Part shown: positions 1-40,880 of the stretch, in pieces
Position numbering within the stretch: the first letter of the stretch is position 1
Layout: the number at the start of each line of letters is the position of its first letter
The notes under the pieces: model-generated
What the model saw: the letters and a program-made list of their open reading frames with translations, nothing else
The model's database searches: none
What the model was told of the DNA's origin: nothing
Assembly: GCA_907165135.1 (NCBI GenBank)
Contig: OU015567.1
Span: 6,014,001 to 6,078,000, forward strand
Reading direction: 5' to 3'
DNA from: Oikopleura dioica
Lineage: Eukaryota; Animalia; Chordata
Length of the DNA stretch: 64,000 nucleotides
Program-made: the position numbers and the translations under genes

Positions 1-3000
1 GAATAATGAAGACGCGCCTTATCCAAGTTGTCAAAACGGACATCGTAATTATTATAAAAATACCAAAAGGCCGAAAATCGAAACAAAAAATAGAAAACGA
101 GAAACTAATTTTTCTAAAAATCGGCAAAATTCAAAACCCGGTTTCGAAAGAAAGAATTTTAAAAATAGAAAATTAAATCTGATAAGGCCGTTTGATCAAA
201 AACTAGAAATCCTGCTAAGAAAACCTGAGTCAGGAATTGAAGGAGCTTCTTTTCAAATCCTGACTCAGGTTTTCTACACGGCATGGTGTCTGGAACCGAC
301 AAAAAATTTCGACAGATTTTGCGTGGGCGGCTACTCGGCTGCTGATTGGCCGGTTTGCCGAATCCAGGCTTCTGATTGGCTGAAAATTTCCACGCAAAAT
401 TTGTCGACATTTTTTGTCGGTTCCAGACACTATACAGTTTAGTCTATACTGTGTAGAAAACCTGAGTCAGGATTTCAAAAAGCTGTTTCGAATTCTGACT
501 CAGGTTTTCTAAACAGGTTGCCAAGCCTTGATCAAAAACACTTTTTTTAAAGGACGGCAATTTTGACACACTCGAGAGTTGAAAAACTCAGTTTCAATTT
601 GAAAAAGCTCAATATTTTGATTCTGTTGGAGCATTTCGATAAAAATCAAAACTTTTGGCACTTGAATCCGGAGATCGCTTCGAGTGTTGCCCCGTCATTT
701 ACCGACCAATACCGGCCAATTTGGCTAAACACTAGAACAGGCCTGTAATTGCTCAGAATAACAGAAACATCAGCAAATAGTAGTATTTCAAATTGAGGTT
801 GATTTTCCCGCAAATTTTTGCCATTTTTAATCATTTTTTTAATTTTCATTTTTTTATATTAAATTTTTGCGAATATATTAAATTTTTGCGTTTTTGCGGT
901 AAATTATCATGTTGGGACTGGTTCCAATGATTATTGCGACTTTGGATATTTTTTATGCAGTTTTGGAGGCAATTTACAATTTTCCGCCTCATTATTGTCC
1001 CTGAGCCGACAACTCTGGCAGATATCGAGATATCTATTTTCTACCCGCAATCGCCGGTGATTATTTGTCCCACTGATTAGCGGACTATTAGCTAAGATAG
1101 AAGTTAGCTAAAATGACTTTCCAACGAGTCCCAAGGTCGATAACTTTGCGGCTTCGTTTCAAAAAAAAAGCCGCAGCGCGGCTTCTCATTCAAGCTCCTT
1201 CAGGCCCTGACTCAGGTTTTCTGCACAGGTTTTTAATTCCAGGCCGGTTTTGTTGGCAAGTTTTTCAATTCCGAAATTCCAAAACTGCAAAATTTTCCAA
1301 TAAGTTTTGATATTTGTTATTCGCTTCACTTTGTGCCGGGATTCAGCTGCGTCCAAATATGCGCCCGTTAGAGCAGCCGCTTCACCTCCACCGCCGATTG
1401 CTTGCTGCGCGCAATCAAAAATTAATCACACTGACACCACCAAAATTACGCCACCTGCAAACTCAAAATCATGCAAAAAGAAGCAACCATACAAATTTTC
1501 AGCTAACACAAAAAAAAAATTAATCTATTTTGAAATTTCCGATTTTAGCAAAGTGATACCCTTATTTTTTTGAATCAATAAAATGTTCGGTTTTTAGTAA
1601 AAAAAATGCCAAAAGCAATGTTCGTTCTAAAACGCATATAAAATAGTAGTAAGTAACTTAGCATCTAAAATAAATGACTCGGGCTGACCTCAATCAAATA
1701 ACCAAATAACTTTTCTTCAAAGTGATTTTGTTTAGTTTTTCGGTTTTGAGTAAAAACGTGTTTTGGAAGAAAGATAAGCCGGTTACATACACAATCACTT
1801 CTACCTAAATGCAGTTCTAGCGCCCGAATCGAGCTTCTTTCTTTTAAAAATGCGGAATTGGCAGATTTGCCGATTCATTATTTTTCATTTTGCGGTGAAT
1901 TTTTAATTGATTTTGATTGACAATCAAATTTGAAGGTAAATCTGGATATTGACAAGAAGCCACGCCTCATATCAAAAAAGCCACCTGTAAAGCATAACTA
2001 CTCTTAATTTTTAATTGTTAGCAGTTTCCATTTGACATAAAATATTATTGAATGCTTTGCTTTATTCGATCAAAAAGGAGATAATTTCTTCAATGGAGTT
2101 TTTAGCTGAAAAAGAACAAGCTCGAATATGACTGAAAAGCGGCCTTTTAGCATAATGACACCCTTATTTTGAAGCCTTCTCTGGGCTCGGCAACCTGTGT
2201 GGAAAACCTGAGTCAGGCTTCGCGGCTTTTCAATTTTGCATTTTTGGACCTGACTCAGGTTTTCCACACAGGTTGCCTACCCCAGAGCAAGCTTCAAAAT
2301 AAGGGTGTCACAATGTTAGAAGGCCACTTTCAGTCGCATTTAACGACCCTCTCATTGAGCTTTACAATTGGGTTTATGACAGTAACACCTTTTCTAGCGC
2401 TTGAAAAGAGGTTTAGATTTGTCTTTTTGGCGAATAGTTGTCTTGATTGTGGAATTCAAAGCTCAAGTGAGTTTATCTCGGGCGCATTCGCGCAGATTTC
2501 GCGTCTATTTTTCCAAAATTCCAAATAATAGTACGAATTCCAAAGAACTTCAGCTCTTTTTCAACCCTTTTTCGGCGAGTTCTAGGGCGAAGAAATTAAT
2601 GTTGGCGCGACTTTTGGCGCATTCTATCGCCACTTTTGTGTTGTAGTTATTTCACGAATTTCAGATGTTTTACGAAATTTATTGAAAGAAAAAAAGAAAT
2701 TTTGTATCAAGAGGATTTGGGTTGTGATCCTGGTGCGACTGAAAAATGGCGCTGCGGTCGTCAGATTTTCGAGAAAAATATTTTCGCGGATTTTGGCGCG
2801 CCAGCGAGGTGTGTTGCGGAAGCCGCAGAACACACTTGTTCTTCAAACATCATCCAAAATTATTATCAAGCCAGCTTGGCGATTTTAGAATCGCGAAAAT
2901 CTTGTTTTCGCCATTTTAACCCATTTTCATCTGTTAACCAATTATTTGGCAGGGCTAAAATGAGCACTTTTGTTGGATGAGTTTCTTTCGATCGAGATTC

Positions 3001-3746
3001 TAGCCGCTTTTCAGCCGTTTTTCGACATTTTTGAGCGTGCCAATTTATTGGTAATTGAGAATGAATGGGTTAAAGTCGTAAAATCGTCGATTTCGCATTG
3101 AAAATCGCGCTAGAATTGCGTTTTTTTGCTTGAAAATGGAGTCTTTACTCGCTCAGCAATTCTAGAACGAACTGTATTCAGCGGATACAGTATTGCTTAC
3201 AGAAGTTGATTATGCTATTTTGCCGCTTTTTAAATATTAATTTGTGTGCCCAAAAAGCAAAATCTTTTTTGTTGGCGCAGCTAATTGGCGGCCCTTATCG
3301 CTTTCCCAAACAGGAATTGTTTTTCTTGTTGGGAGTGGAGGCACACCTGCCCCCGGGGCGTGCCCATCAATATTAAATCAAAGTACCTAAGAAGCTAGGC
3401 CACAATACAATACAATAAAAAGAAGGAAAATCAATGGCGATTATTTTTTCTAATTGTGGGCACTCGAGACACCGACCGGTCCCCGGCGGCTCGCCCCTTT
3501 GTAGCAGGTGCTCAGAGCATTTGGAGAAAAGGAGGGCTGCGGGGGCCAGTGGCACCGATTTCAAACAAATTTCCAAATTCTGTCAAAGACACTTTGAAAT
3601 GAAGATAATCGATTTTTAGCGAGGCCACGCTTCCGAAAGCTTTTTAAATAACACTTGTTAGTTTGGAAATCAAATTGACGAGTTCTTGACAGCCCAGGCT
3701 CTCAGCTGTCTGACAGACTGTCTGACAGACGAATCATTAATTAGAG

Positions 3747-4893
3747 GGGAGTTTCCTTACATGGTACAAATCCTTACATGGTACATTTCCTTACAAGGTA
3801 CAAAATCCTTACATGGTACAAAAATCAAATTGTACCATGTAAGGAATTGTACCAGGTAAGGAAATCTACCATGTAAGGATTTTTGTACCAGCTAAGGAAA
3901 TTCAAAATAAAAAAATTTTAAATAATAAAAATCGACACATTCAGCCAAAACAGAATTCTACCTTACCCCCCTATTGAGCATATTTTTTACTTCAAAAAAA
4001 TTTTTTTTTATTATAGTTTCGTATTTGTTCTCAATTTTTAGAGACACTTATAAGTGGTCGGGTCAAGTGTCGGTGCCGATTACCAGGGATCTAATTTTTT
4101 TCGCGAAAATCCCAATTTTCGGTGTTTTTTGCGTCGCAATAGCAATTCGTTTTCGGCAAAAATTTTGATCCCTGCCGATTACCCTTTTTCAAGGTCGGGT
4201 CGGGTCAGGTTATTTTAAAATGGCCAGAATCATGGTCGGGTTGGGTCGGGACGGGTCGGCCTTTTGGATACTTTTTTTTAAATATGGATGATTTTAACCC
4301 CCATCGGCCAAAATGTCTATTTTGTCTATATGGACATGTCGATTTAGAAACAATTTTTTCGAAGTTTTCGATAAATAATTTATTAATCAAGAAGTGGCGT
4401 GCAAATTTATCGTTCTAACGCACATGCCATGTATGAAACTCTATAATTCTAACGCGAAGTCACTATTTTGATTGTAATATTTTCAGAATTGCGCAATCAA
4501 AAACCGACCGAAAATCGGACCCGACCGACCCAACCGACCACGGATTTTGCCATTTTTTGTAAGGGCTACACTTTAAAACATCGACTTACCATCGACCAAC
4601 CGACTAAAACGAGTGTCGGAGAGTTCAATTTTGAGTAAATACGAAAATAATGAAAATAAAATTTTGAAAATGAAAATTTATGCTCGATTGGGGGTCGAGT
4701 AGAATAATGTTTTGAGTAAATGTGTCAATTTTTGTTTTTGAAAATTTCTATTTCGAATTTCCTTACATGGTACAAAAATCCTTACATAGTACAAAATCCT
4801 TACATGGTACAATTTTATTTTTGTACCATGTAAGGAAATGTACCATGTAAGGAAATGTACCATGTAAGGATCTGTACCATGTAAGGAAACCCC
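3747..4893. mobile_element. 1.15-kb non-autonomous TIR element with 8-bp TSD and subterminal CCTTACATGGTACA repeat arrays
   Basis: Ends GGGAGTTTCCTTACATGGTACA / TGTACCATGTAAGGAAACCCC; TSD AATTAGAG at 3739-46 and 4894-4901. Confidence 0.85.
4084..4174. mobile_element. 91-bp hAT-type MITE nested in the 3747-4893 element
   Basis: CAGGGATC...GATCCCTG ends; perfect 8-bp TSD CCGATTAC (4076-83, 4175-82). Confidence 0.88.
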
Positions 4894-33286: not shown

Positions 33287-36200
33287 ATGATATTTTTACT
33301 CTTCTTTTGGTCGCGATTTTCATCTGGAAAAGAGATATTCACCGGCTTCCTGGAAACAGCAAGCGCGCCTCTTGGATCGAAATGCGAGTTTCCCTTTGTT
33401 TTTGAGAACAGAACTCACGATGACTGTCACTTTTCAACTCGGGACGGACTTGATGCTCCTGCTTCTTGGTGCATTACTAATTCGACGACCGGCGAATGGG
33501 GCATTTGCCTGCCTGCTGAGGTGAGATCAAGAAAGAGAGAGGGTAAGATCTGCATTTTGTAGTATTCGTGTATCGATAACGACTTCGGAGAAGGGAGGAT
33601 CTGCAGGACTTCGATCCAGGAAGACGCGACCTTTTCCGACGCTCGAGAAAGGTGCTCTTCCTTTGACGGAATTATCTACGACCCATTCGTCTCTCTAGCT
33701 GCTTTCACGGACCTGCTGGAAGTAGACATCTCAAACCCAGCTTCAATGAATCTCACCTCTTTCTGGACCTCTTCTTTGAGCTATATTACTCAGCATAAGG
33801 CGTCTTGCCTTGCTGACACTTATTTTGCGATTTTCCCGGTAAGTTACCTTTCCCCCTTTTCAACCTTTTTCTAAAGCTCGTTTTCATAAGGCCAACAATA
33901 TGAACTCGACGCTGATAAATAGCTACGAAGACAGTGAAGTGAAAGCATACGACCATGTTCCATTTTTTGTAAATGGCGGTACAAACGACAGTAAGTAAAA
34001 AACTATCATATTCGCACTAATTTTTATTTAAGCTTGCTCGGAGAAAGCCCTCTATCTTAATCCGACTCTTGGAACACTTTTCGAAGCGGACATTAGCGAG
34101 AAGCTCCCCTTTTATTGCAGATACAAGGGACGCCAGGGCTCAAACTTCGAGCTGAACAAATATTCAGCAAAGGACTATCAGAATATGACCTGTCCTAAGA
34201 TGTTCACTTTCATTCCCAACTCGCCGGAGCCTTGTGTCAAAATTATAGAAAACGCAAATGACAAAGGATTCTGCACTGCTCTGGGAGGAAAACTTTTGGA
34301 TGCATCCACACCGATTTCTGTTTGGAAAAGGAAGGCGTTTATTTATCAACTTGAAATATTTTTAGGAACACTAAATAAAACGCTTGAAGGATTTCGATGA
34401 AAGCGTCAACAACAGCGTTTTATCTCGGAAAAATTAATTTCGAGGTAGTGAATAGAGGCCACGTTTATCAGGTGTTCTCTGAAAACGAATGGGATAAATA
34501 TATTATCTGGGACCGTCCAATGCATAATTTCAATAACGAAGATTTTCAAATGTTCTTTCCTTGGAAGATGTTTAACTTTCTCTTTACTAAAGACGTTTTT
34601 GTCTACGACGACGGAGAGTCGGAGCTCTCATCGTTATGTGCTGCGAGACCAGTTTTTGGGAAGCAGGACTCTTACTGGCAAGACTGCAGAACCGACTCAT
34701 TTCCTAACGGAGAGCCACTCGACTTTGAGCGCAAAAATTGCTACGGAATAGCTCCAGAGAAGACAACAAGGACTGCCGCGATGGAATATTGCAAGTCTCG
34801 AAATGCGACTTTTGATAACTTCAAATCTTCTCCAGAAGCAAACGAAACAGTGAAAGAGCTAGAATTGTGGACCGGTTTAACAAATAATGACACGATCATT
34901 TGGAAATTACTAAACATCAATGCTTCATCTTCAGAAGAATTCTGTGTAGGTCGCAACATTGTTCATGGCAAAAGAGAAACCTTTGAAAAAGTGTCATGCG
35001 AGGACCTGAGACATCCGATCTGCAAATGGCCCAGAAAAGAAGAGGAAAAAACTCCGGCAAAGAGACAATTGAGCTGTCCAAAAGGTTGGAATTTGGCTAA
35101 CCACACAATCAGCGCTGGGACGAAATGGATCAACGAAACCTCTCCAGCCGAAGAATTTACTTGTAAAGCGATTTTGGGAAGATGCACTGTTCCTGCTTGC
35201 ACATACGATTTGGCATTTCCGCGAAATGAAATTGGGCCAGGTTTTAATATCAAAAGACTTGTCATGCAAGAAGCTTTTTTCGGGTGGATTTGCAGAGATG
35301 TTGGTGCAGCCATGATTGGTGATCAGTTGGGAATGTCCCTGATGCAGCATAATTACAAATGCGTTCTCCAGCCATTTGCGAATGAAACGCAAAGTTCTCA
35401 GTTCAACTTCAACATGACACAGATCCTCGCCGATTCATTCGAATTGAAAGCGTGCGACAAAGAAAATTCCGAAGGCTTTGCGAAATTTGGCAACGAAACG
35501 ACCTGTTTTTTCCTTTCGAAAGAGGCAAAAACTTGGGCTGAAGCTCGTTCTTTTTGTAGAAAACAGAACGCTCAAGCGACTCTAGCATATCTTCCAAAGA
35601 AGAAATCGTTAAATTATGCAATGCACTATCTCGTCGAAACGAATTCTTCAGATGATGTCTGGATTGGCTTGACCAGCTATCACGATTTGCACATGTTCGG
35701 CGACTGGTCCAGCGATTTCAAATGGAGCGCAAGTGGAGAAATCATCGACGAAAATCTTTTCAACTATTTGGCAAATCATCCAGCGTCCAAATTCGACAGA
35801 TGCGTTAGTTATGGAAACGATATTTTTTTCAATTTCAATCATTGCTCTGATACGAAACGATTCATGTGCACTTTGAGTGACATAAAACCGCGAAATAATC
35901 AGGACGATCGAAACAAGCGCGGCTCCTGGTGCCCGGCAAATACGTACAAGCAGGGCTACTCTTGCTTCACCTTCTTCAACGAGACGAAAGACACTTTCAA
36001 TTTGACATATGATGCTGCAAGTGAACTGTGTGAGGAAGAAGACGGTCGAATGCTCGCGTCGTTTTACAGAAGGGATCAAAACTTGGCTCTAGCGGCTTCG
36101 CTGTGTAACAGTACTTTCTCCGCGAATTTGAAGGGATTTTGGCTGGGGCTGAAAGGAAAGTACAGTTGGGAGGGGGACAAACTAGAGTTCAAGTGGCTGG

Positions 36201-38050
36201 ATCAATCGCCATTTACGTTCAGCAACTGGTTGAGTAGTAATGATCTGCTGCAGTTTCGAGGGTACGCTGGTGTCCAAGCCGAGAGACACAAATGTGTTTA
36301 CTTCAACGCGGACCCCAGCGAGGGCGAAATCGGCCAATGGGGGCTCAAAGACTGCAACGACATGGATGGCATGGGCGCTCTCTGCTCTCACCCAAAGTGG
36401 GCAACGAAAGACTACGTCGACCAGTGTCGAGACATTGCTCCTCCAAGCACTTGCCAGAGAGGAACTAATACTCCTCTTGGCTGCAAAGCTTTGTCCCGAC
36501 CTCAGCGAAAACAATGCATGAAAACTTGCGGCTTCTGTGGAAAGAGGAGAACTCAGAAGAGAATGCGAAAGCCAAATGGAGACTTTTTCGACGCTTGCCC
36601 GGATGTCAAGTGGGAAGGGAAGACAATGAACAGAAAAGCTGCCGGAAATGGCGGATGCATGTTTTTCAACCGATGGACCTACCTGAACTTTAGATCAAGA
36701 AGGGCGAAAAGAAATCGAATCGAGGACGCAACTTGGGACGATGCTCAGGGAATTTGCATGACCGCGAAGGAGGCAGGCGAGAAGGGAAGACGAGCGAACC
36801 TTGTTCATGGCGATTCTTGTGCCTACACAACGATGGAAGCATATCTCTGGAAAGAAGCGATTCTAGGCAGGGGTATTCGGCAAGGAAATGACGAGACAGA
36901 AGACGATGATGATAGCGATGATGACGGTGATGAAAACTCCAACGACGATGAAGAGAGCGAGGACGACAACGACTCGATGAGCGATGAAAATGTCGACGAA
37001 GATGTTTTCACGGACAAAGACAAGCTTGCATGGCTCGGACTTCGCTTCAACTTTGAATCCGGTTCTTTCGAGCAAATCTCTGGGCGACTTGGCGCTGGAA
37101 ATCACTGGGCAGCTGGGGAGCCAAATTTGACAAGAAGAGGGGATGAAAAGTATCTTTGCGCGGCGGCGGACTACGAAAGTGCGAACAGAACGGAGTGGAG
37201 AATGGTTCCTTGCAATCTCACTTTACCGGTAAAAATTTAATCATTGTTGGAAAGAGAGTGGGATTTTTAGTTTTTCTGCACTTGGGACGAGCATGAAAAC
37301 TTCGCCTCGCTGAACCAAGGCTTTTGCGAACGAGTCCAGGGAGCTGATTACTGGATGCATCTCGACAACACTTGCTTCTATGGAAAGAAAGAGCGCATTT
37401 CTTTTGACGATGCTCACGGCTTCTGCAAAAATATGACCGGCGAGATTTTGAAGATTAACGATTTGGAGAAAATCCGATTTATAAGGAATGAGTTTAGTCA
37501 GTCGAGAATCATGAATAATTTCAACTGGGAGAGTAACTTCTTCTGGCTTTCTTCAGGAAAAAGTCAGATAAGAATCACGTGATTTTCAATATATTTGATT
37601 TATTGGCGACTTGATTCAGTAAATTACTCGAAAAACGGTCTATTTTGGAATGGAACGGACCAAAAACTCGAAGAAAATACATTCGCTAATATTCCTGATG
37701 ATCGACCAGATGATAACTATGTTTTATCTTGGCAACTGTCTCACGAGCACGATAAAGTGGGCTTGTTCTACAAAGAAAAGGAGAGCAAAAGCATGGTTAT
37801 TTGCGAACGACCGGCGATGGTGATGAAACGAGTTCCAAAACGAGGACATGGATTTTTAGTCTTTCTAGGAGAGGGTTGTAGAAAGAGCTTGATCGATTTT
37901 ATCGTTTATCTTCAACTTTGGCAAGTGATTGCAACTGTGATCTGCGTCGGAATTTTCTTGTGGAAACGGCAACAAGGCGAAAACTACCGATACCTGCCGA
38001 CCGAGAGGATCATCCAAAACGATACGATGACACAACGTCTCAAATTTTGA
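33287..38050 (+). CDS. Type I membrane receptor: signal peptide, fibronectin type II, about 7 C-type lectin-like domains, ShK domain, TM (mannose-receptor-like architecture)
   Basis: Exon 33287-33520 encodes CEFPFVFENRTHDDC..WC..WGIC (FnII). The long ORF 34397-37240 has repeated CTLD motifs (TWAEARSFC, VWIGL, FKWS, FWLGL, WAAGEPN). ShK is at 36425-36538. The hydrophobic segment VIATVICVGIFLW is followed by KRQQ near 37930. Several small introns were inferred. Confidence 0.85.
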
Positions 38051-38387: not shown

Positions 38388-40880
38388 ATGGCGAAAAGAA
38401 TAAAGCCTGAGAATGTCGAAAAAATTGACCATCCGTCTGAACTTGATAGAGAGAAAGTTGACTCTTGGCTAGAAGGATCTCTTCGGAAACTGAAGAGTAC
38501 GACTTCACGGACTCAGAAATGCCGACTTTTGGAATCGGTTGAGCGACTTGATTTTGAATATGATAGAAATGCTGCTTTTTGGGAATTCATAAAATTTGAT
38601 AAAGAAGGCCGTGGGACAATTTACGACAGATATAAAAGAAAACTTGAGGAGTTTGAGCAGACAGAATTTCAAAAAGTAATTCTTGAACATAAGCCGTCTC
38701 TTATTGATGAGAAGATTGGACGATGGGAGATCAAGGAAGAGTCTGGTGATTGGCAATTAGATGACGATTTGGAAAAGAAGCTGCTATCGCAAGGGGGAGA
38801 AGCGATCGTGCTTGCTGAGAATTTCGACGGTTTTGAGGCAGTTGTGCGAGTGCAGGTCTTTGATCCTTTTCTTTTCACGGAGGAATTTGAAGAGGAGGGA
38901 TTTACTTGCGAAATTCATCTTTCGAGAGGTAAAAATAGATTTGAAAAATATTTTTTAGGTATTGTTAAGACTTTCAACGAGCAAAAGAAAAAGAAGGATC
39001 ATCAGAGGGCGAGGATCAAGTGCCATTTCATGAGAATGTGATCCGTCACTTTGTGAATATTGAGCTGTTTTACGCGAAAGACGAGAAAAAAGAGGATTGC
39101 TTGGGGTGGATTACGATCATGGAGAGAGGAGAGGCGAATTTTAGAACGTTATTGAAAGCAGAGAAAATTGGTCTGGAAACGAGAAAGAAGATTGCGAGTG
39201 GAATTTTGGATGGGAATGAATATTTGTGGAGTCGCGGAATTTGGCATCTCGATCAGGGCTGTTGATTCCGGGTCCTTTCGGATTACCCGCGAGAAAAAAG
39301 TCATTTAGGTGTCTATTAATCTCACAAAAATATTTTCACCTATTATAAGGCAGCCCGAGTAATTATTCTAAAGCGTAAAAACGCGTAAAAACTTGCGGGT
39401 TACCCGGAAAAAAGTCGCGGGTAATTTGAAAGGACTCGAAATCGACAGCCGTGATCTGGATTTTAAATTTGAAAACATTTTGCTTGTTGGTGGAACTCCG
39501 AAGTTTATTGACTTTGGGCTCGTTACGGAGAAAACCGGTCGAGAAGGCTACCGAAAAATGGGGTACGCCAGAAAAGGATCAAAATACAAAAATTCTAGCT
39601 CTCTTGGTATGTTTTCGGAAAATTTCAATTTTTATAAATTTTGAAGCCGCTGGGACGTCGGGATTCACTCTTCATGCTCAAATCGCGAATGGCCATAGTT
39701 ATTATGATTTTAATCTTTACTATTTTCTTTTTGTCGACTGGAAAACCGCGTGGACACTTCTGTACCAACCACTCGATAGTGGTGAAAGAAAAGAAATAGA
39801 TGAAATTGTTGAAGTAAGAACTTGATTTGTCGATTTTGTAATTTTGTTTTTATGGATTGTGGAGCAACCTCAATCAAAAATTTGAATGCGCTCGATGAGA
39901 ATTATTTTTCATCACTTCGCAATTTCTTCTCCGAAGTCACGAAAATAATCTCGCTGAAAAACGCTTCAACCATCTTCTGCTTAGATGATCCAAACTTGAC
40001 CCAGTCTTGCAAGATGTCCAGTTTAAAACAAAACGCGACAAAGTTCCTCAACCAAAACATGCAAAATTTGACGAAAAATGTCTTCGACCAAAAAACTAGT
40101 CAACTTTGCGTCCCGATTTCAGTCACCACTCTTCTCCGTTATGCCATCATAAATGACCTTCCTGCTTTCGATGATCAATTGGGTCGCTTCAGCTTTGAAA
40201 GAATTCTCGCAACTTTAACGATGATTGTTTTTCCGCGAAGTTTGGCCGGACTCAATTTGAATCCCAACAAGAAAGAAAAAGAAAAGCAAGAAAATGAAAT
40301 CGAGATTCTTTTGAACCGACTTTGCAAAGAAAGTTATCTTATGGAAAGTGGATGGCAAATCATCAGAGGAGTACAAGAAGGTGAAGAAGATGACGATTTT
40401 TATAAAAAAAATTTTCCAGTTAAATCAAGCTGTCAGTTCAATTCAGGTAATTCATCATAAAACAACTAGAATTAAACCTTTTCAGTGTTTCTCAGCGAAA
40501 ACTTCACCTTCACCCGTCCCGCAACAGTCACTGGCGCGTATTTACCTTCATCTGGCGATATCTTCTTCCACCAAATGACGCTCGACCGGGTCGAAAACGG
40601 CGAGTACGTTCTCCAAAACAGCGATTTCAAGGATCATTCTCCAGGTTTTAAACTTCTTACCTCTCAAAATTAGCCTCCTTTAGTTCTTAGCATTCCGTTG
40701 AAAAATCCATACTACACCGATTACGGACACATTTGGCATATTATCAACAAAACTTCAATCAGCGTTTTCGAAGAGGACGGAATAAAATGCAAATTAGTGA
40801 ACGAAGAGTTCGGAAACATGGAGGAAAACAAGTGGTATCTTCATCCTACTGCTTACACCATTCAGCTCATTCCAGAATAA
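38388..40880 (+). CDS. Protein kinase-like domain fused to a C-terminal papain-like cysteine protease domain; this copy is interrupted by a MITE (possibly a non-functional allele or pseudogene)
   Basis: Exons approx. 38388-38928, 38970-39253, [MITE], 39462-39606, 39647-39813, 39855-40446, 40486-40645, 40684-40880. Kinase motifs: SQGGEAIV, HENVIR, ITIMERG, HLD/FKFEN, IDFG, GTSGF. Protease motifs: DQKTSQLC, FHQMTL, YVLQNS. Confidence 0.75.
39254..39453. mobile_element. 200-bp hAT-type MITE inside the kinase catalytic loop
   Basis: About 40-bp imperfect TIRs (CAGGGCTGTTGATTCCGGGTCCTTTCGGATTACCCGCGA / TCGCGGGTAATTTGAAAGGACTCGAAATCGACAGCCGTG). The 8-bp TSD is ATCTCGAT (39246-53) / ATCTGGAT (39454-61), one mismatch. 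Confidence 0.9.

What the first reader, a model, noticed from the sequence alone, without database searches (positions are those of the whole stretch)
38388..40880. Atypical kinase fused to an apparently intact papain-fold cysteine protease
Seen: after the kinase-like domain, the spliced frame gives DQKTSQLC (Gln 40089, Cys 40107), FFHQMTL (His 40569) and YVLQNS (Asn 40617). The Q-C spacing of 6 and H-N spacing of 16 match papain Q19/C25 and H159/N175. There is no signal peptide or cathepsin propeptide, so it would be cytosolic. The kinase has Arg at the usual VAIK lysine position (AVVRVQ), HLD for HRD, and an intact DFG. Inference: a single-chain (pseudo)kinase-regulated protease, e.g. a lineage-specific signalling, immune or cell-death switch. 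I do not know this architecture from established animal families.
Basis: partly seen in the sequence, partly recalled or inferred. Interest (0 to 1): 0.85.

Follow-up and report, generated by a model that had tools for sequence, protein, structure and literature searches.

The report
Kinase fused to papain-fold protease
This Oikopleura gene belongs to an undescribed family of 34 or more paralogues that join an unusual protein kinase to a cysteine protease of the papain fold in one chain, although this copy has a transposon in its kinase active-site loop and may not be fully functional.

Summary
All the motifs sit at the stated coordinates, and a seven-exon + strand model (38388-40880) gives a protein of about 680 aa.

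- The gene belongs to a family of at least 34 O. dioica paralogues. The best one is only 53% identical. They are labelled only "protein kinase domain-containing".
- Across the family the protease residues are conserved: Gln 36/36, Cys 34/36, His 22/22, Asn 19/22.
- An AlphaFold model of the closest paralogue's C-terminal domain puts the Cys at the N-terminus of a helix and the His and Asn on a beta-hairpin.
- A structure search of 48,161 PDB chains that does not rely on Foldseek returned only papain-fold enzymes in its top 50. The best hits were family C1 (Z 9.6) and C39 (Z 8.9).
- No Pfam model matches the domain, so it is an unclassified clan CA family.
- The kinase is DAPK-like. Its beta3 Lys is always Arg, but the catalytic Asp, Lys, Asn and the DFG motif are invariant.
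- Uninterrupted ORFs in metagenome contigs span kinase and protease, so the fusion does not depend on my splicing model.

Two caveats apply to this copy. A 200-bp hAT-type MITE sits inside the kinase catalytic loop, and the family's intron-4 acceptor reads TG instead of AG. No RNA reads from this copy were found.

First readers of this scan also flagged three paralogues elsewhere in this genome. None has been followed up.

The parts
38388..38928 (+). Exon 1: start ATG, the conserved N-terminal region, and the kinase N-lobe with the SQGGEA loop and AVVRVQ (Arg at the beta3 Lys position).
   Evidence: Translation. Aligns with paralogues. Arg is present in 23/23 family members.
38929..38969 (+). 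Intron 1, 41 nt, GT-AG.
   Evidence: The join gives HLSR|DFQRAKEK, which matches the paralogues' ...ISDFEKAED.
38970..39253 (+). Exon 2: kinase hinge and alphaE region, ending in the H-L-D of the catalytic loop.
   Evidence: Pfam Pkinase match to profile positions 70-123, E 0.017. Alignment.
39254..39453 (.). hAT-like MITE of 200 bp with imperfect terminal inverted repeats of about 39 bp that start CAGGGCTGT.
   Evidence: Inverted repeat found. Self-BLAST of the ends. The homologous position in paralogue P0088 lies within a single exon.
39454..39461 (.). Second copy of the 8-bp target-site duplication (ATCTGGAT). The first copy, ATCTCGAT, is at 39246-39253.
   Evidence: Read directly from the sequence. 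Removing 39254-39461 restores H-L-D-F-K-F-E-N, which matches the family pattern HxDxKxxN.
39462..39606 (+). Exon 3: the rest of the catalytic loop (FKFEN), DFG, and the activation segment. The real 5' boundary is unknown. AG acceptors at 39415, 39433 and 39449 also give open frames.
   Evidence: Pfam Pkinase match to profile positions 123-153, E 0.006.
39607..39646 (+). Intron 3, 40 nt, GT-AG.
   Evidence: P0088 has an intron at the same position, after residue 341.
39647..39813 (+). Exon 4: kinase C-lobe (TSGF, DWKTAW).
39814..39899 (+). Intron 4 as modelled (86 nt, GT-AG, in frame). Bases 39852-39899 still encode DCGATSIKNLNALDE, which is homologous to exon sequence in the paralogues, but the acceptor expected at 39850-39851 reads TG.
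   Evidence: P0088 has a 45-nt phase-0 GT-AG intron between IVE and KCNATS. The window's frame is shown and the alignment.
39900..40446 (+). Exon 5: the conserved linker (FCLDDPNLT.S) and the helical half of the papain-fold domain, with Gln at 40089 and Cys at 40107.
   Evidence: The Cys sits at the N-terminus of helix 78-93 in the paralogue model.
40447..40485 (+). Intron 5, 39 nt, GT-AG.
40486..40644 (+). Exon 6: beta-hairpin carrying His (40569) and Asn (40617).
40645..40683 (+). Intron 6, 39 nt, GT-AG.
40684..40880 (+). Exon 7: the C-terminal beta-sheet of the papain-fold domain (WYLHPTAYT), with the stop codon at 40878-40880.

Best explanation
The locus encodes one member of a large appendicularian gene family, strongly expanded in Oikopleura dioica. 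A member is about 700 aa long. It has a conserved N-terminal region, then a DAPK/CAMK-like protein kinase domain, then a conserved linker, and finally a C-terminal cysteine peptidase domain of the papain fold (clan CA).

Shown:
- The peptidase domain belongs to no Pfam family.
- It has the papain arrangement: Gln six residues before a Cys that caps a helix, a His on a beta-strand, and an Asn after the next strand.
- These residues are conserved across the family, and close paralogues evolve under purifying selection (dN/dS about 0.3).
- The kinase always has Arg in place of the ATP-anchoring beta3 Lys, but always keeps the catalytic-loop Asp, Lys and Asn and the DFG Asp.

Inferred:
- The C-terminal domain is an active thiol peptidase or isopeptidase. 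In this copy, which has no signal peptide, it would work inside the cell.
- The kinase-like module binds nucleotide and controls, targets or is processed by the protease. This would resemble the way the kinase or pseudokinase domains of IRE1 and RNase L gate their C-terminal nuclease.
- The family's size and fast divergence fit a role in conflict or recognition, such as immunity, but nothing here tests that.

This copy keeps all seven exons open. It carries a hAT-type MITE inside the kinase catalytic loop and lacks the family's intron-4 AG acceptor. Whether it makes a full-length working protein depends on splicing that I could not observe.
For: Family and fusion:
- 66 clusters at 50% identity match exon 5.
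- 34 O. dioica or metagenome proteins match kinase plus protease.
- The window model aligns end to end with paralogues of about 700 aa.
- Uninterrupted ORFs span the kinase and protease parts in genomic metagenome contigs L002 (398 aa in 1336 nt) and L003 (449 aa in 1543 nt).
- The full-length AF2 model has pLDDT 81 and pTM 0.83.

Fold:
- The domain model core has pLDDT about 85-95. Cys78 starts helix 78-93, His211 lies in strand 208-219, and Asn227 follows strand 222-226.
- VIA-align gives Z 9.7 to ervatamin, mexicain, Der p 1, cathepsins and papain, with 41 chains at Z of 8 or more.
- In the search that does not rely on Foldseek, all top 50 hits are papain-fold enzymes.
- AFDB and Atlas neighbours are C39-like, C58 and C1.

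Conservation: Gln 36/36, Cys 34/36, His 22/22, Asn 19/22. In the kinase, Arg 23/23, Asp 31/31, Lys 31/31, Asn 31/31 and DFG Asp 32/32.

Selection: dN/dS is 0.32-0.34 in the protease part between close paralogues.

Kinase affinity: DAPK1-3 are the best PDB matches, E 3.5e-7, with HFDLKPEN.

Expression of the family: oligo-dT RNA reads from related transcripts overlap the Q/C and H/N motif blocks.
Against: - No biochemical data exist.
- The structure model is of a paralogue that is 59-63% identical in this domain, not of the window's own protein.
- Foldseek E-values against PDB are weak (0.06), and the VIA-align Z values of about 9-10 are only moderately above that tool's stated background of 7-8.
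- No sequence-level match to any peptidase family reaches significance.
- Asn is replaced in three divergent members, and Cys is Ser in two.
- No read of 95% identity or more from this copy was found in four RNA runs. The strain match of those runs is unknown, so this is not a real test.
- The MITE and the TG acceptor may make this copy defective.
- Regulation of the protease by the kinase is pure analogy.
Confidence: 0.75

Rival explanations
1. This copy is a young pseudogene or a non-functional allele of an otherwise functional family. The MITE insertion in the kinase catalytic loop and the loss of the intron-4 acceptor would prevent production of the normal protein.
For: - The MITE with its 8-bp target-site duplication lies between HLD and FKFEN, and read-through hits a stop (HLDQGC*).
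- The acceptor homologous to the one in P0088 reads TG.
- Only 84% of the family's highly conserved positions are kept, against 93-99% in most paralogues.
- The gene sits on a long branch in the tree.
- No reads from this copy were found, and no annotated protein for it was found.
Against: - All seven exons, about 680 codons, are free of stops and frameshifts.
- All catalytic residues of both domains are kept.
- Several in-frame splice options remove most of the MITE, including GT-AG 39261-39414 and GG-AG 39256-39448. The duplicated target site supplies a second L-D directly before FKFEN.
- An in-frame AG acceptor exists at 39898-39899.
- 11-12% of O. dioica introns are non-canonical (PMC8008620).
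- Most substitutions at conserved positions are conservative.
Confidence: 0.3
2. The C-terminal domain has the papain fold but is not a general protease. It could be a deubiquitinase or ubiquitin-like-protein isopeptidase, or another thiol amidase or acyltransferase. In some members it could be a catalytically dead binding module.
For: - The papain fold is shared by DUBs, ATG4, UfSP, ZUFSP, phytochelatin synthase and others, and these appear in the hit lists at Z 5.8-7.6.
- There is no signal peptide or propeptide, as is typical of cytosolic isopeptidases.
- Two members have Ser in place of Cys.
Against: - The best structural matches are C1 and C39 endopeptidases (Z 8.9-9.7), ahead of the DUB-like folds.
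- The Gln-x5-Cys and His-x15-Asn spacing matches papain (the papain numbering is from established knowledge).
- The distant homologue P0066 aligns, below threshold, with falcipain-2 exactly at the Cys and His/Asn motifs.
Confidence: 0.25
3. The kinase and the protease are two neighbouring genes, and the fusion is an artefact of the splicing model.
For: No transcript of this copy was observed. The two parts are separated by an intron whose acceptor is uncertain.
Against: - Continuous ORFs run from the kinase domain into (L002) or through (L003) the protease domain in metagenome contigs.
- In P0088 the kinase C-lobe, the linker and the protease Q/C half lie in one stretch of DNA interrupted only by a 45-nt intron.
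- At least 10 independent full-length annotations exist.
- The full-length model has pTM 0.83.
Confidence: 0.03

Closest known systems
Papain-family cysteine peptidases (MEROPS C1; papain, cathepsins B/K/L/S, Der p 1, ervatamin)
   Same: - Two-lobe fold, with the catalytic Cys at the N-terminus of the central helix.
- Gln six residues upstream of the Cys, and His then Asn 16 residues apart on a beta-hairpin.
- Best structural matches: Z 9.6-9.7 over about 155 aligned residues.
   Different: - No significant match to Pfam Peptidase_C1 or to any PDB sequence.
- No signal peptide and no I29-type propeptide.
- LCVPIS replaces CGSCWAFS around the Cys.
- The domain is fused behind a kinase.
C39 / C39-like peptidase domains (ComA, PCAT1 bacteriocin-processing domains)
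   Same: - A compact papain-fold domain used as a module inside a larger multidomain protein.
- Z 8.7-8.9 with the lowest rmsd, about 3.0-3.2 A.
- One O. dioica paralogue (E4XPZ6) carries the automatic name 'Peptidase C39-like'.
   Different: - No Pfam C39 or C39_2 match in any of 29 members scanned.
- The domain is about 230 aa, against about 130-150 aa for C39.
- It sits in a eukaryotic protein with a kinase, not in an ABC transporter.
Death-associated protein kinases (DAPK1-3, CAMK group)
   Same: - Best sequence matches of the kinase part.
- The non-RD catalytic loop HFDxKxEN and the following DFG block are shared.
   Different: - Only about 90 residues align, at E about 1e-7.
- The beta3 Lys is Arg in every family member, and the Gly-rich loop is reduced to S-E/Q-G-G-E-A.
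- There is no calmodulin-binding, ankyrin or death domain.
IRE1 / RNase L (kinase or pseudokinase domain fused to a C-terminal effector nuclease)
   Same: The logic of the architecture: a kinase-fold module directly followed, in one chain, by an effector enzyme. IRE1 structures are the top Foldseek matches of the full-length model, over about 450 columns.
   Different: - The effector here is a papain-fold peptidase, not a KEN/HEPN RNase.
- TM-scores are low (0.2-0.36), so the match is essentially to the kinase domain.
- No evidence of back-to-back dimerisation or nucleotide gating was obtained. This is an analogy only.

Membership tests
Clan CA (papain fold) cysteine peptidases | Helical lobe plus beta-sheet lobe, with the nucleophilic Cys at the N-terminus of the central helix. 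| tested here: met
   In the AF2 model of paralogue P0088:398-697, Cys78 starts helix 78-93 and a beta-sheet lobe spans 176-299. All top 50 hits of the unbiased PDB structure search are papain-fold, with Z up to 9.6.
Clan CA (papain fold) cysteine peptidases | Catalytic residues in the order Gln, Cys, His, Asn/Asp, and conserved. | tested here: met
   The window has Gln 40089, Cys 40107, His 40569 and Asn 40617. In the family: Gln 36/36, Cys 34/36, His 22/22, Asn 19/22.
Clan CA (papain fold) cysteine peptidases | Thiol-dependent peptide or isopeptide bond hydrolysis. | not testable with these tools
   Needs recombinant protein, activity-based probes and a Cys-to-Ala control.
MEROPS C1 / Pfam PF00112 Peptidase_C1 | Significant match to the family profile. 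| tested here: not met
   No PF00112 hit for the window's exons or for 29 family members, even at E up to 1-10. The only trace is P0066, with sub-threshold matches to Peptidase_C1_2 (E 0.032) and falcipain-2 (E 0.37) at the catalytic motifs.
MEROPS C1 / Pfam PF00112 Peptidase_C1 | Synthesis as a secreted or lysosomal zymogen with a signal peptide and an inhibitory propeptide. | tested here: not met
   The window's N-terminus is hydrophilic (maximum Kyte-Doolittle value -0.54). The protease domain is preceded by a kinase and a family-specific linker, with no I29 match.
MEROPS C39 / Pfam PF03412, PF13529 | Significant match to the family profiles. | tested here: not met
   No hit. There is only structural similarity (Z 8.9) and an automatic UniProt name on one paralogue.
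Eukaryotic protein kinase superfamily (Pfam PF00069) | Kinase fold and a profile match. | tested here: met
   The window's exons give piecewise Pkinase hits (E 0.006-0.017, below the gathering score because the domain is split). The paralogues carry precomputed PF00069 annotations. DAPK matches at E 3.5e-7. The full-length model matches kinases with Foldseek probability 1.0.
Eukaryotic protein kinase superfamily (Pfam PF00069) | The catalytic residue set of active kinases: beta3 Lys, catalytic-loop Asp and Asn, DFG Asp. | tested here: inconclusive
   Asp, Asn and the DFG Asp are invariant, but the beta3 Lys is Arg in 23/23 members. In this copy the catalytic loop is also interrupted by the MITE. 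Phosphotransfer activity cannot be judged from sequence.

The most novel reading that the evidence does not exclude
The family is a previously unrecognised class of intracellular switch proteins. A nucleotide-binding, probably non-phosphorylating, kinase module would gate a covalently attached papain-fold protease through oligomerisation or release of the linker. The family would have diversified into dozens of paralogues in larvaceans as an innate-immune, self/non-self or cell-death system, a protease counterpart of RNase L/IRE1.
Probability: 0.15. Interest if true: 0.85.

Novelty: new variant of a known kind. Interest (0 to 1): 0.55.

Why it matters
Protein kinases and papain-like proteases are two of the best-studied enzyme folds. 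Even so, I found no description of a single chain that joins them, and this one exists as dozens of paralogues under purifying selection in a chordate with one of the most compact animal genomes.

If the kinase-like module controls the protease, the family would be a new way to couple nucleotide sensing or phosphorylation to irreversible proteolysis. The invariant Lys-to-Arg change alongside an otherwise intact active site also makes it a natural test case for what such 'pseudokinases' do.

On the practical side:
- The protease domain is missing from Pfam, and the proteins are annotated only as kinases, so current annotation hides the architecture.
- The MITE in the catalytic loop is a ready-made case for asking whether O. 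dioica can splice out a transposon as an intron.

Tried and rejected
- Pfam scans of every exon and of 29 family members found nothing for the C-terminal domain.
- A profile search of family alignment A2 against all PDB sequences gave only one spurious hit.
- A feature search of exon 5 in the ESM Atlas was uninformative, with scores of 0.68. For the paralogue domain it gave only leads, many of them Peptidase_C1 clusters at 0.88-0.89.
- The Atlas shape search with the full-length model found kinases only and no second protein with both domains.
- RNA evidence: no listed run is shown to hold the stretch. Laying four runs gave 0-20 reads, all 90-95% identical and confined to the two conserved motif blocks, so they come from paralogues or another lineage. 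No splice joints were recovered, so the MITE and intron-4 questions stay open.
- tBLASTn of family proteins against the window found no second copy.
- I tested whether N-glycosylation sequons are enriched, as a hint of secretion. The total count is not above shuffled expectation, and only two NLT sites are conserved.
- Literature searches for this architecture or for O. dioica kinase/protease families found nothing relevant.
- I could not fold the window's own spliced protein, because a spliced sequence has no single reference. The closest paralogue was used instead.
- Rejected ideas: a chance motif (ruled out by conservation and fold), two separate genes (ruled out by continuous ORFs in relatives), and HLD as a kinase defect (DAPK has HFD).
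Full report
**Observation.** The region was read directly.
- On the + strand an ATG at 38388 opens exon 1.
- With short GT-AG introns (38929-38969, 39607-39646, 40447-40485, 40645-40683) and an 86-nt intron (39814-39899), seven exons give a stop-free protein of about 680 aa ending at 40880.
- The tiny introns and all database relatives point to Oikopleura dioica.

**A family, not a one-off.**
- An exhaustive HMMER search with exon 5 found 66 clusters at 50% identity.
- A word-indexed search found 34 proteins. Nearly all are O. dioica entries named only 'protein kinase domain-containing protein', and ten are about 690-720 aa long.
- The window's model aligns with these from residue 21 to the end, but at no more than 53% identity. 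It is therefore a distinct paralogue.
- In a tree it is sister, on a long branch, to the P0088/P0082/P0089 clade.
- Cluster look-ups show members from the Norwegian and Okinawan O. dioica assemblies and from marine metagenomes.
- There is no second copy in this window.
- First readers of this scan flagged three more paralogues elsewhere in this genome. None has been followed up.

**Is it really one chain?**
- I could not get transcripts of this copy. No listed run holds the stretch. The few reads that laid were 90-95% identical and confined to the two catalytic motif blocks, so they come from related transcripts.
- The fusion does not depend on splicing, however. Two metagenome contigs carry uninterrupted ORFs. 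L002 (398 aa in 1336 nt) runs from the kinase domain into the N-terminal half of the protease domain. L003 (449 aa in 1543 nt) runs from the kinase DFG region through the whole protease domain.
- In the closest paralogue, P0088 (locus L001), the kinase C-lobe, the linker and the Q/C half of the protease lie in one stretch broken only by a 45-nt intron.
- A full-length AlphaFold model of P0088 has pLDDT 81 and pTM 0.83.
- The linker is disordered when the C-terminal part is modelled alone but becomes confident in the full-length model. This suggests it packs on the rest of the protein. That is an inference, because I could not inspect coordinates.

**The C-terminal domain.** No Pfam family matches it in the window or in 29 relatives, and a family profile finds nothing in PDB sequences. 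Structure is clear, though.
- The model of P0088:398-697 has a well-predicted core (residues 75-300, pLDDT mostly 85-95).
- The Cys is exactly at the start of helix 78-93, the His lies in strand 208-219, and the Asn comes just after the next strand.
- Foldseek E-values against PDB are weak (0.06), but the top hits are AvrPphB, staphopain, ComA and cathepsins.
- VIA-align gives Z 9.7 to ervatamin, mexicain, Der p 1, cathepsins and papain, with 41 chains at Z of 8 or more.
- A search of 48,161 PDB representatives that does not lean on Foldseek returns only papain-fold enzymes in its top 50. C1 leads at Z 9.6, C39 reaches 8.9, and ATG4, UfSP and ZUFSP score lower.
- AFDB and Atlas neighbours are C39-like, C58 and C1.
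- A distant kinase-less homologue from a metagenome, P0066, reads DQKNSSLCWAF ... GHAMVLIG ... YLFKNSY. It aligns, below threshold, with falcipain-2 at exactly these motifs.

**Conservation and selection.**
- Across the family, Gln is 36/36, Cys 34/36 (two Ser), His 22/22 and Asn 19/22.
- Between close paralogues, dN/dS in the protease part is 0.32-0.34.
- I conclude that this is a papain-fold, clan CA domain with an intact catalytic set. It is not a member of C1 or C39 by their profile definitions.

**The kinase.**
- The best solved relatives are DAPK1-3 (E 3.5e-7). Their catalytic loop is HFDLKPEN, so a non-Arg residue in 'HRD' is normal for this type.
- Family-wide, the catalytic-loop Asp, Lys and Asn and the DFG Asp are invariant.
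- The beta3 Lys is Arg in 23/23 members, and the Gly-rich loop is S-E/Q-G-G-E-A.
- This pattern suggests a constrained nucleotide-binding site with doubtful phosphotransfer. It cannot be settled by sequence alone.

**Defects specific to this copy.**
- A 200-bp element with terminal inverted repeats of about 39 bp (starting CAGGGCTGT) and an 8-bp target-site duplication (ATCTCGAT / ATCTGGAT) sits at 39254-39461, between H-L-D and F-K-F-E-N. These are the hallmarks of a hAT-type MITE.
  - Read-through stops after HLDQGC.
  - Removing the element plus one copy of the duplication restores the family's HxDxKxxN loop.
  - Several in-frame splice options exist, including a canonical GT-AG (39261-39414) and a GG-AG (39256-39448). 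The duplicated target site supplies an L-D directly before FKFEN.
- Where P0088 has a phase-0 GT-AG intron between IVE and KCNATS, the window has GT...TG. The homologous codons (DCGATSIKNLNALDE) are still open, but the next in-frame AG, at 39898-39899, would skip them.
- O. dioica has 11-12% non-canonical introns (PMC8008620). Which sites are used here is unknown.
- The copy keeps 84% of the family's most conserved positions, against 93-99% for most paralogues, and its changes are mostly conservative.
- I put the chance that it is a young pseudogene or defective allele at about 0.3.

**Mechanism.**
- Shown: the architecture, the fold, the conserved catalytic residues, purifying selection among close paralogues, and the absence of a signal peptide or propeptide in this copy.
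- Inferred: an active thiol peptidase or isopeptidase working inside the cell, coupled to a nucleotide-binding kinase-like module. The nearest architectural analogy is IRE1/RNase L. IRE1 also tops the Foldseek list for the full-length model, but with low TM-scores that reflect only the kinase domain.
- An immune or cell-death role is speculation. It rests only on family size and divergence.
- Paralogues of the nearest clade begin with a strongly hydrophobic helix, so localisation may differ within the family.

**Novelty.** Both folds are known. I found no description of their fusion or of this peptidase family in the searched literature. Automatic annotation sees only the kinase, apart from one 'C39-like' label. 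I rate this a new variant of a known kind, of moderate interest.

Noticed in passing
window 39246-39461: A hAT-like MITE of 200 bp (terminal inverted repeats CAGGGCTGT..., 8-bp target-site duplication ATCTCGAT/ATCTGGAT) is inserted exactly in the kinase catalytic-loop codons. The duplication recreates an L-D codon pair in front of FKFEN. This could serve as a test case for a transposon acting as an intron in O. dioica. No other copy of the element is in this window.
   Followed up: partly
window 39814-39899: The family's intron-4 acceptor reads TG instead of AG. Even so, the 16 codons behind it (DCGATSIKNLNALDE) remain open and homologous to the paralogues' exon sequence. Either a non-AG acceptor is used or the splice site was lost recently.
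   Followed up: partly
window 34397-38050, + strand: The upstream neighbour is a large gene with C-type lectin domains (Pfam Lectin_C, E 1e-19). It has further CTLD-like pieces at 37355-37582 and a hydrophobic C-terminal segment. It ends about 340 bp before the kinase-protease ATG, on the same strand.
   Followed up: partly
P0088, P0082, P0083 (paralogues; L001 4102-): The clade nearest to the window's gene starts with a strongly hydrophobic helix (MLEFSILAILATCIAGM..., Kyte-Doolittle 2.4 over 15 residues). This may be a signal peptide or a membrane anchor. Other clades have a weaker version, and the window's copy has none.
   Followed up: partly
family linker, window 39900-40085: The linker before the protease (FCLDDPNLT.S ... 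NLTKNV) is among the most conserved stretches of the family. It includes two NLT sequons kept in 25 of 26-27 members. It is predicted disordered when the domain is modelled alone and ordered in the full-length model. It could be an autoinhibitory or processing segment.
   Followed up: no
L005 (GCA_000209555.1 FN654303) 1-4702: The divergent family member P0042 lies directly downstream of another 665-aa kinase gene on the same strand. If that neighbour is also a family member, which I did not check, this would be a tandem array.
   Followed up: no
L004 (metagenome contig, P0066/P0099): There are stand-alone 305-311-aa homologues of the protease domain without a kinase. Their motifs are more papain-like (CWAF, GHAMVLIG, KNSY). 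The source organism is unknown. They may represent the pre-fusion form of the domain.
   Followed up: partly
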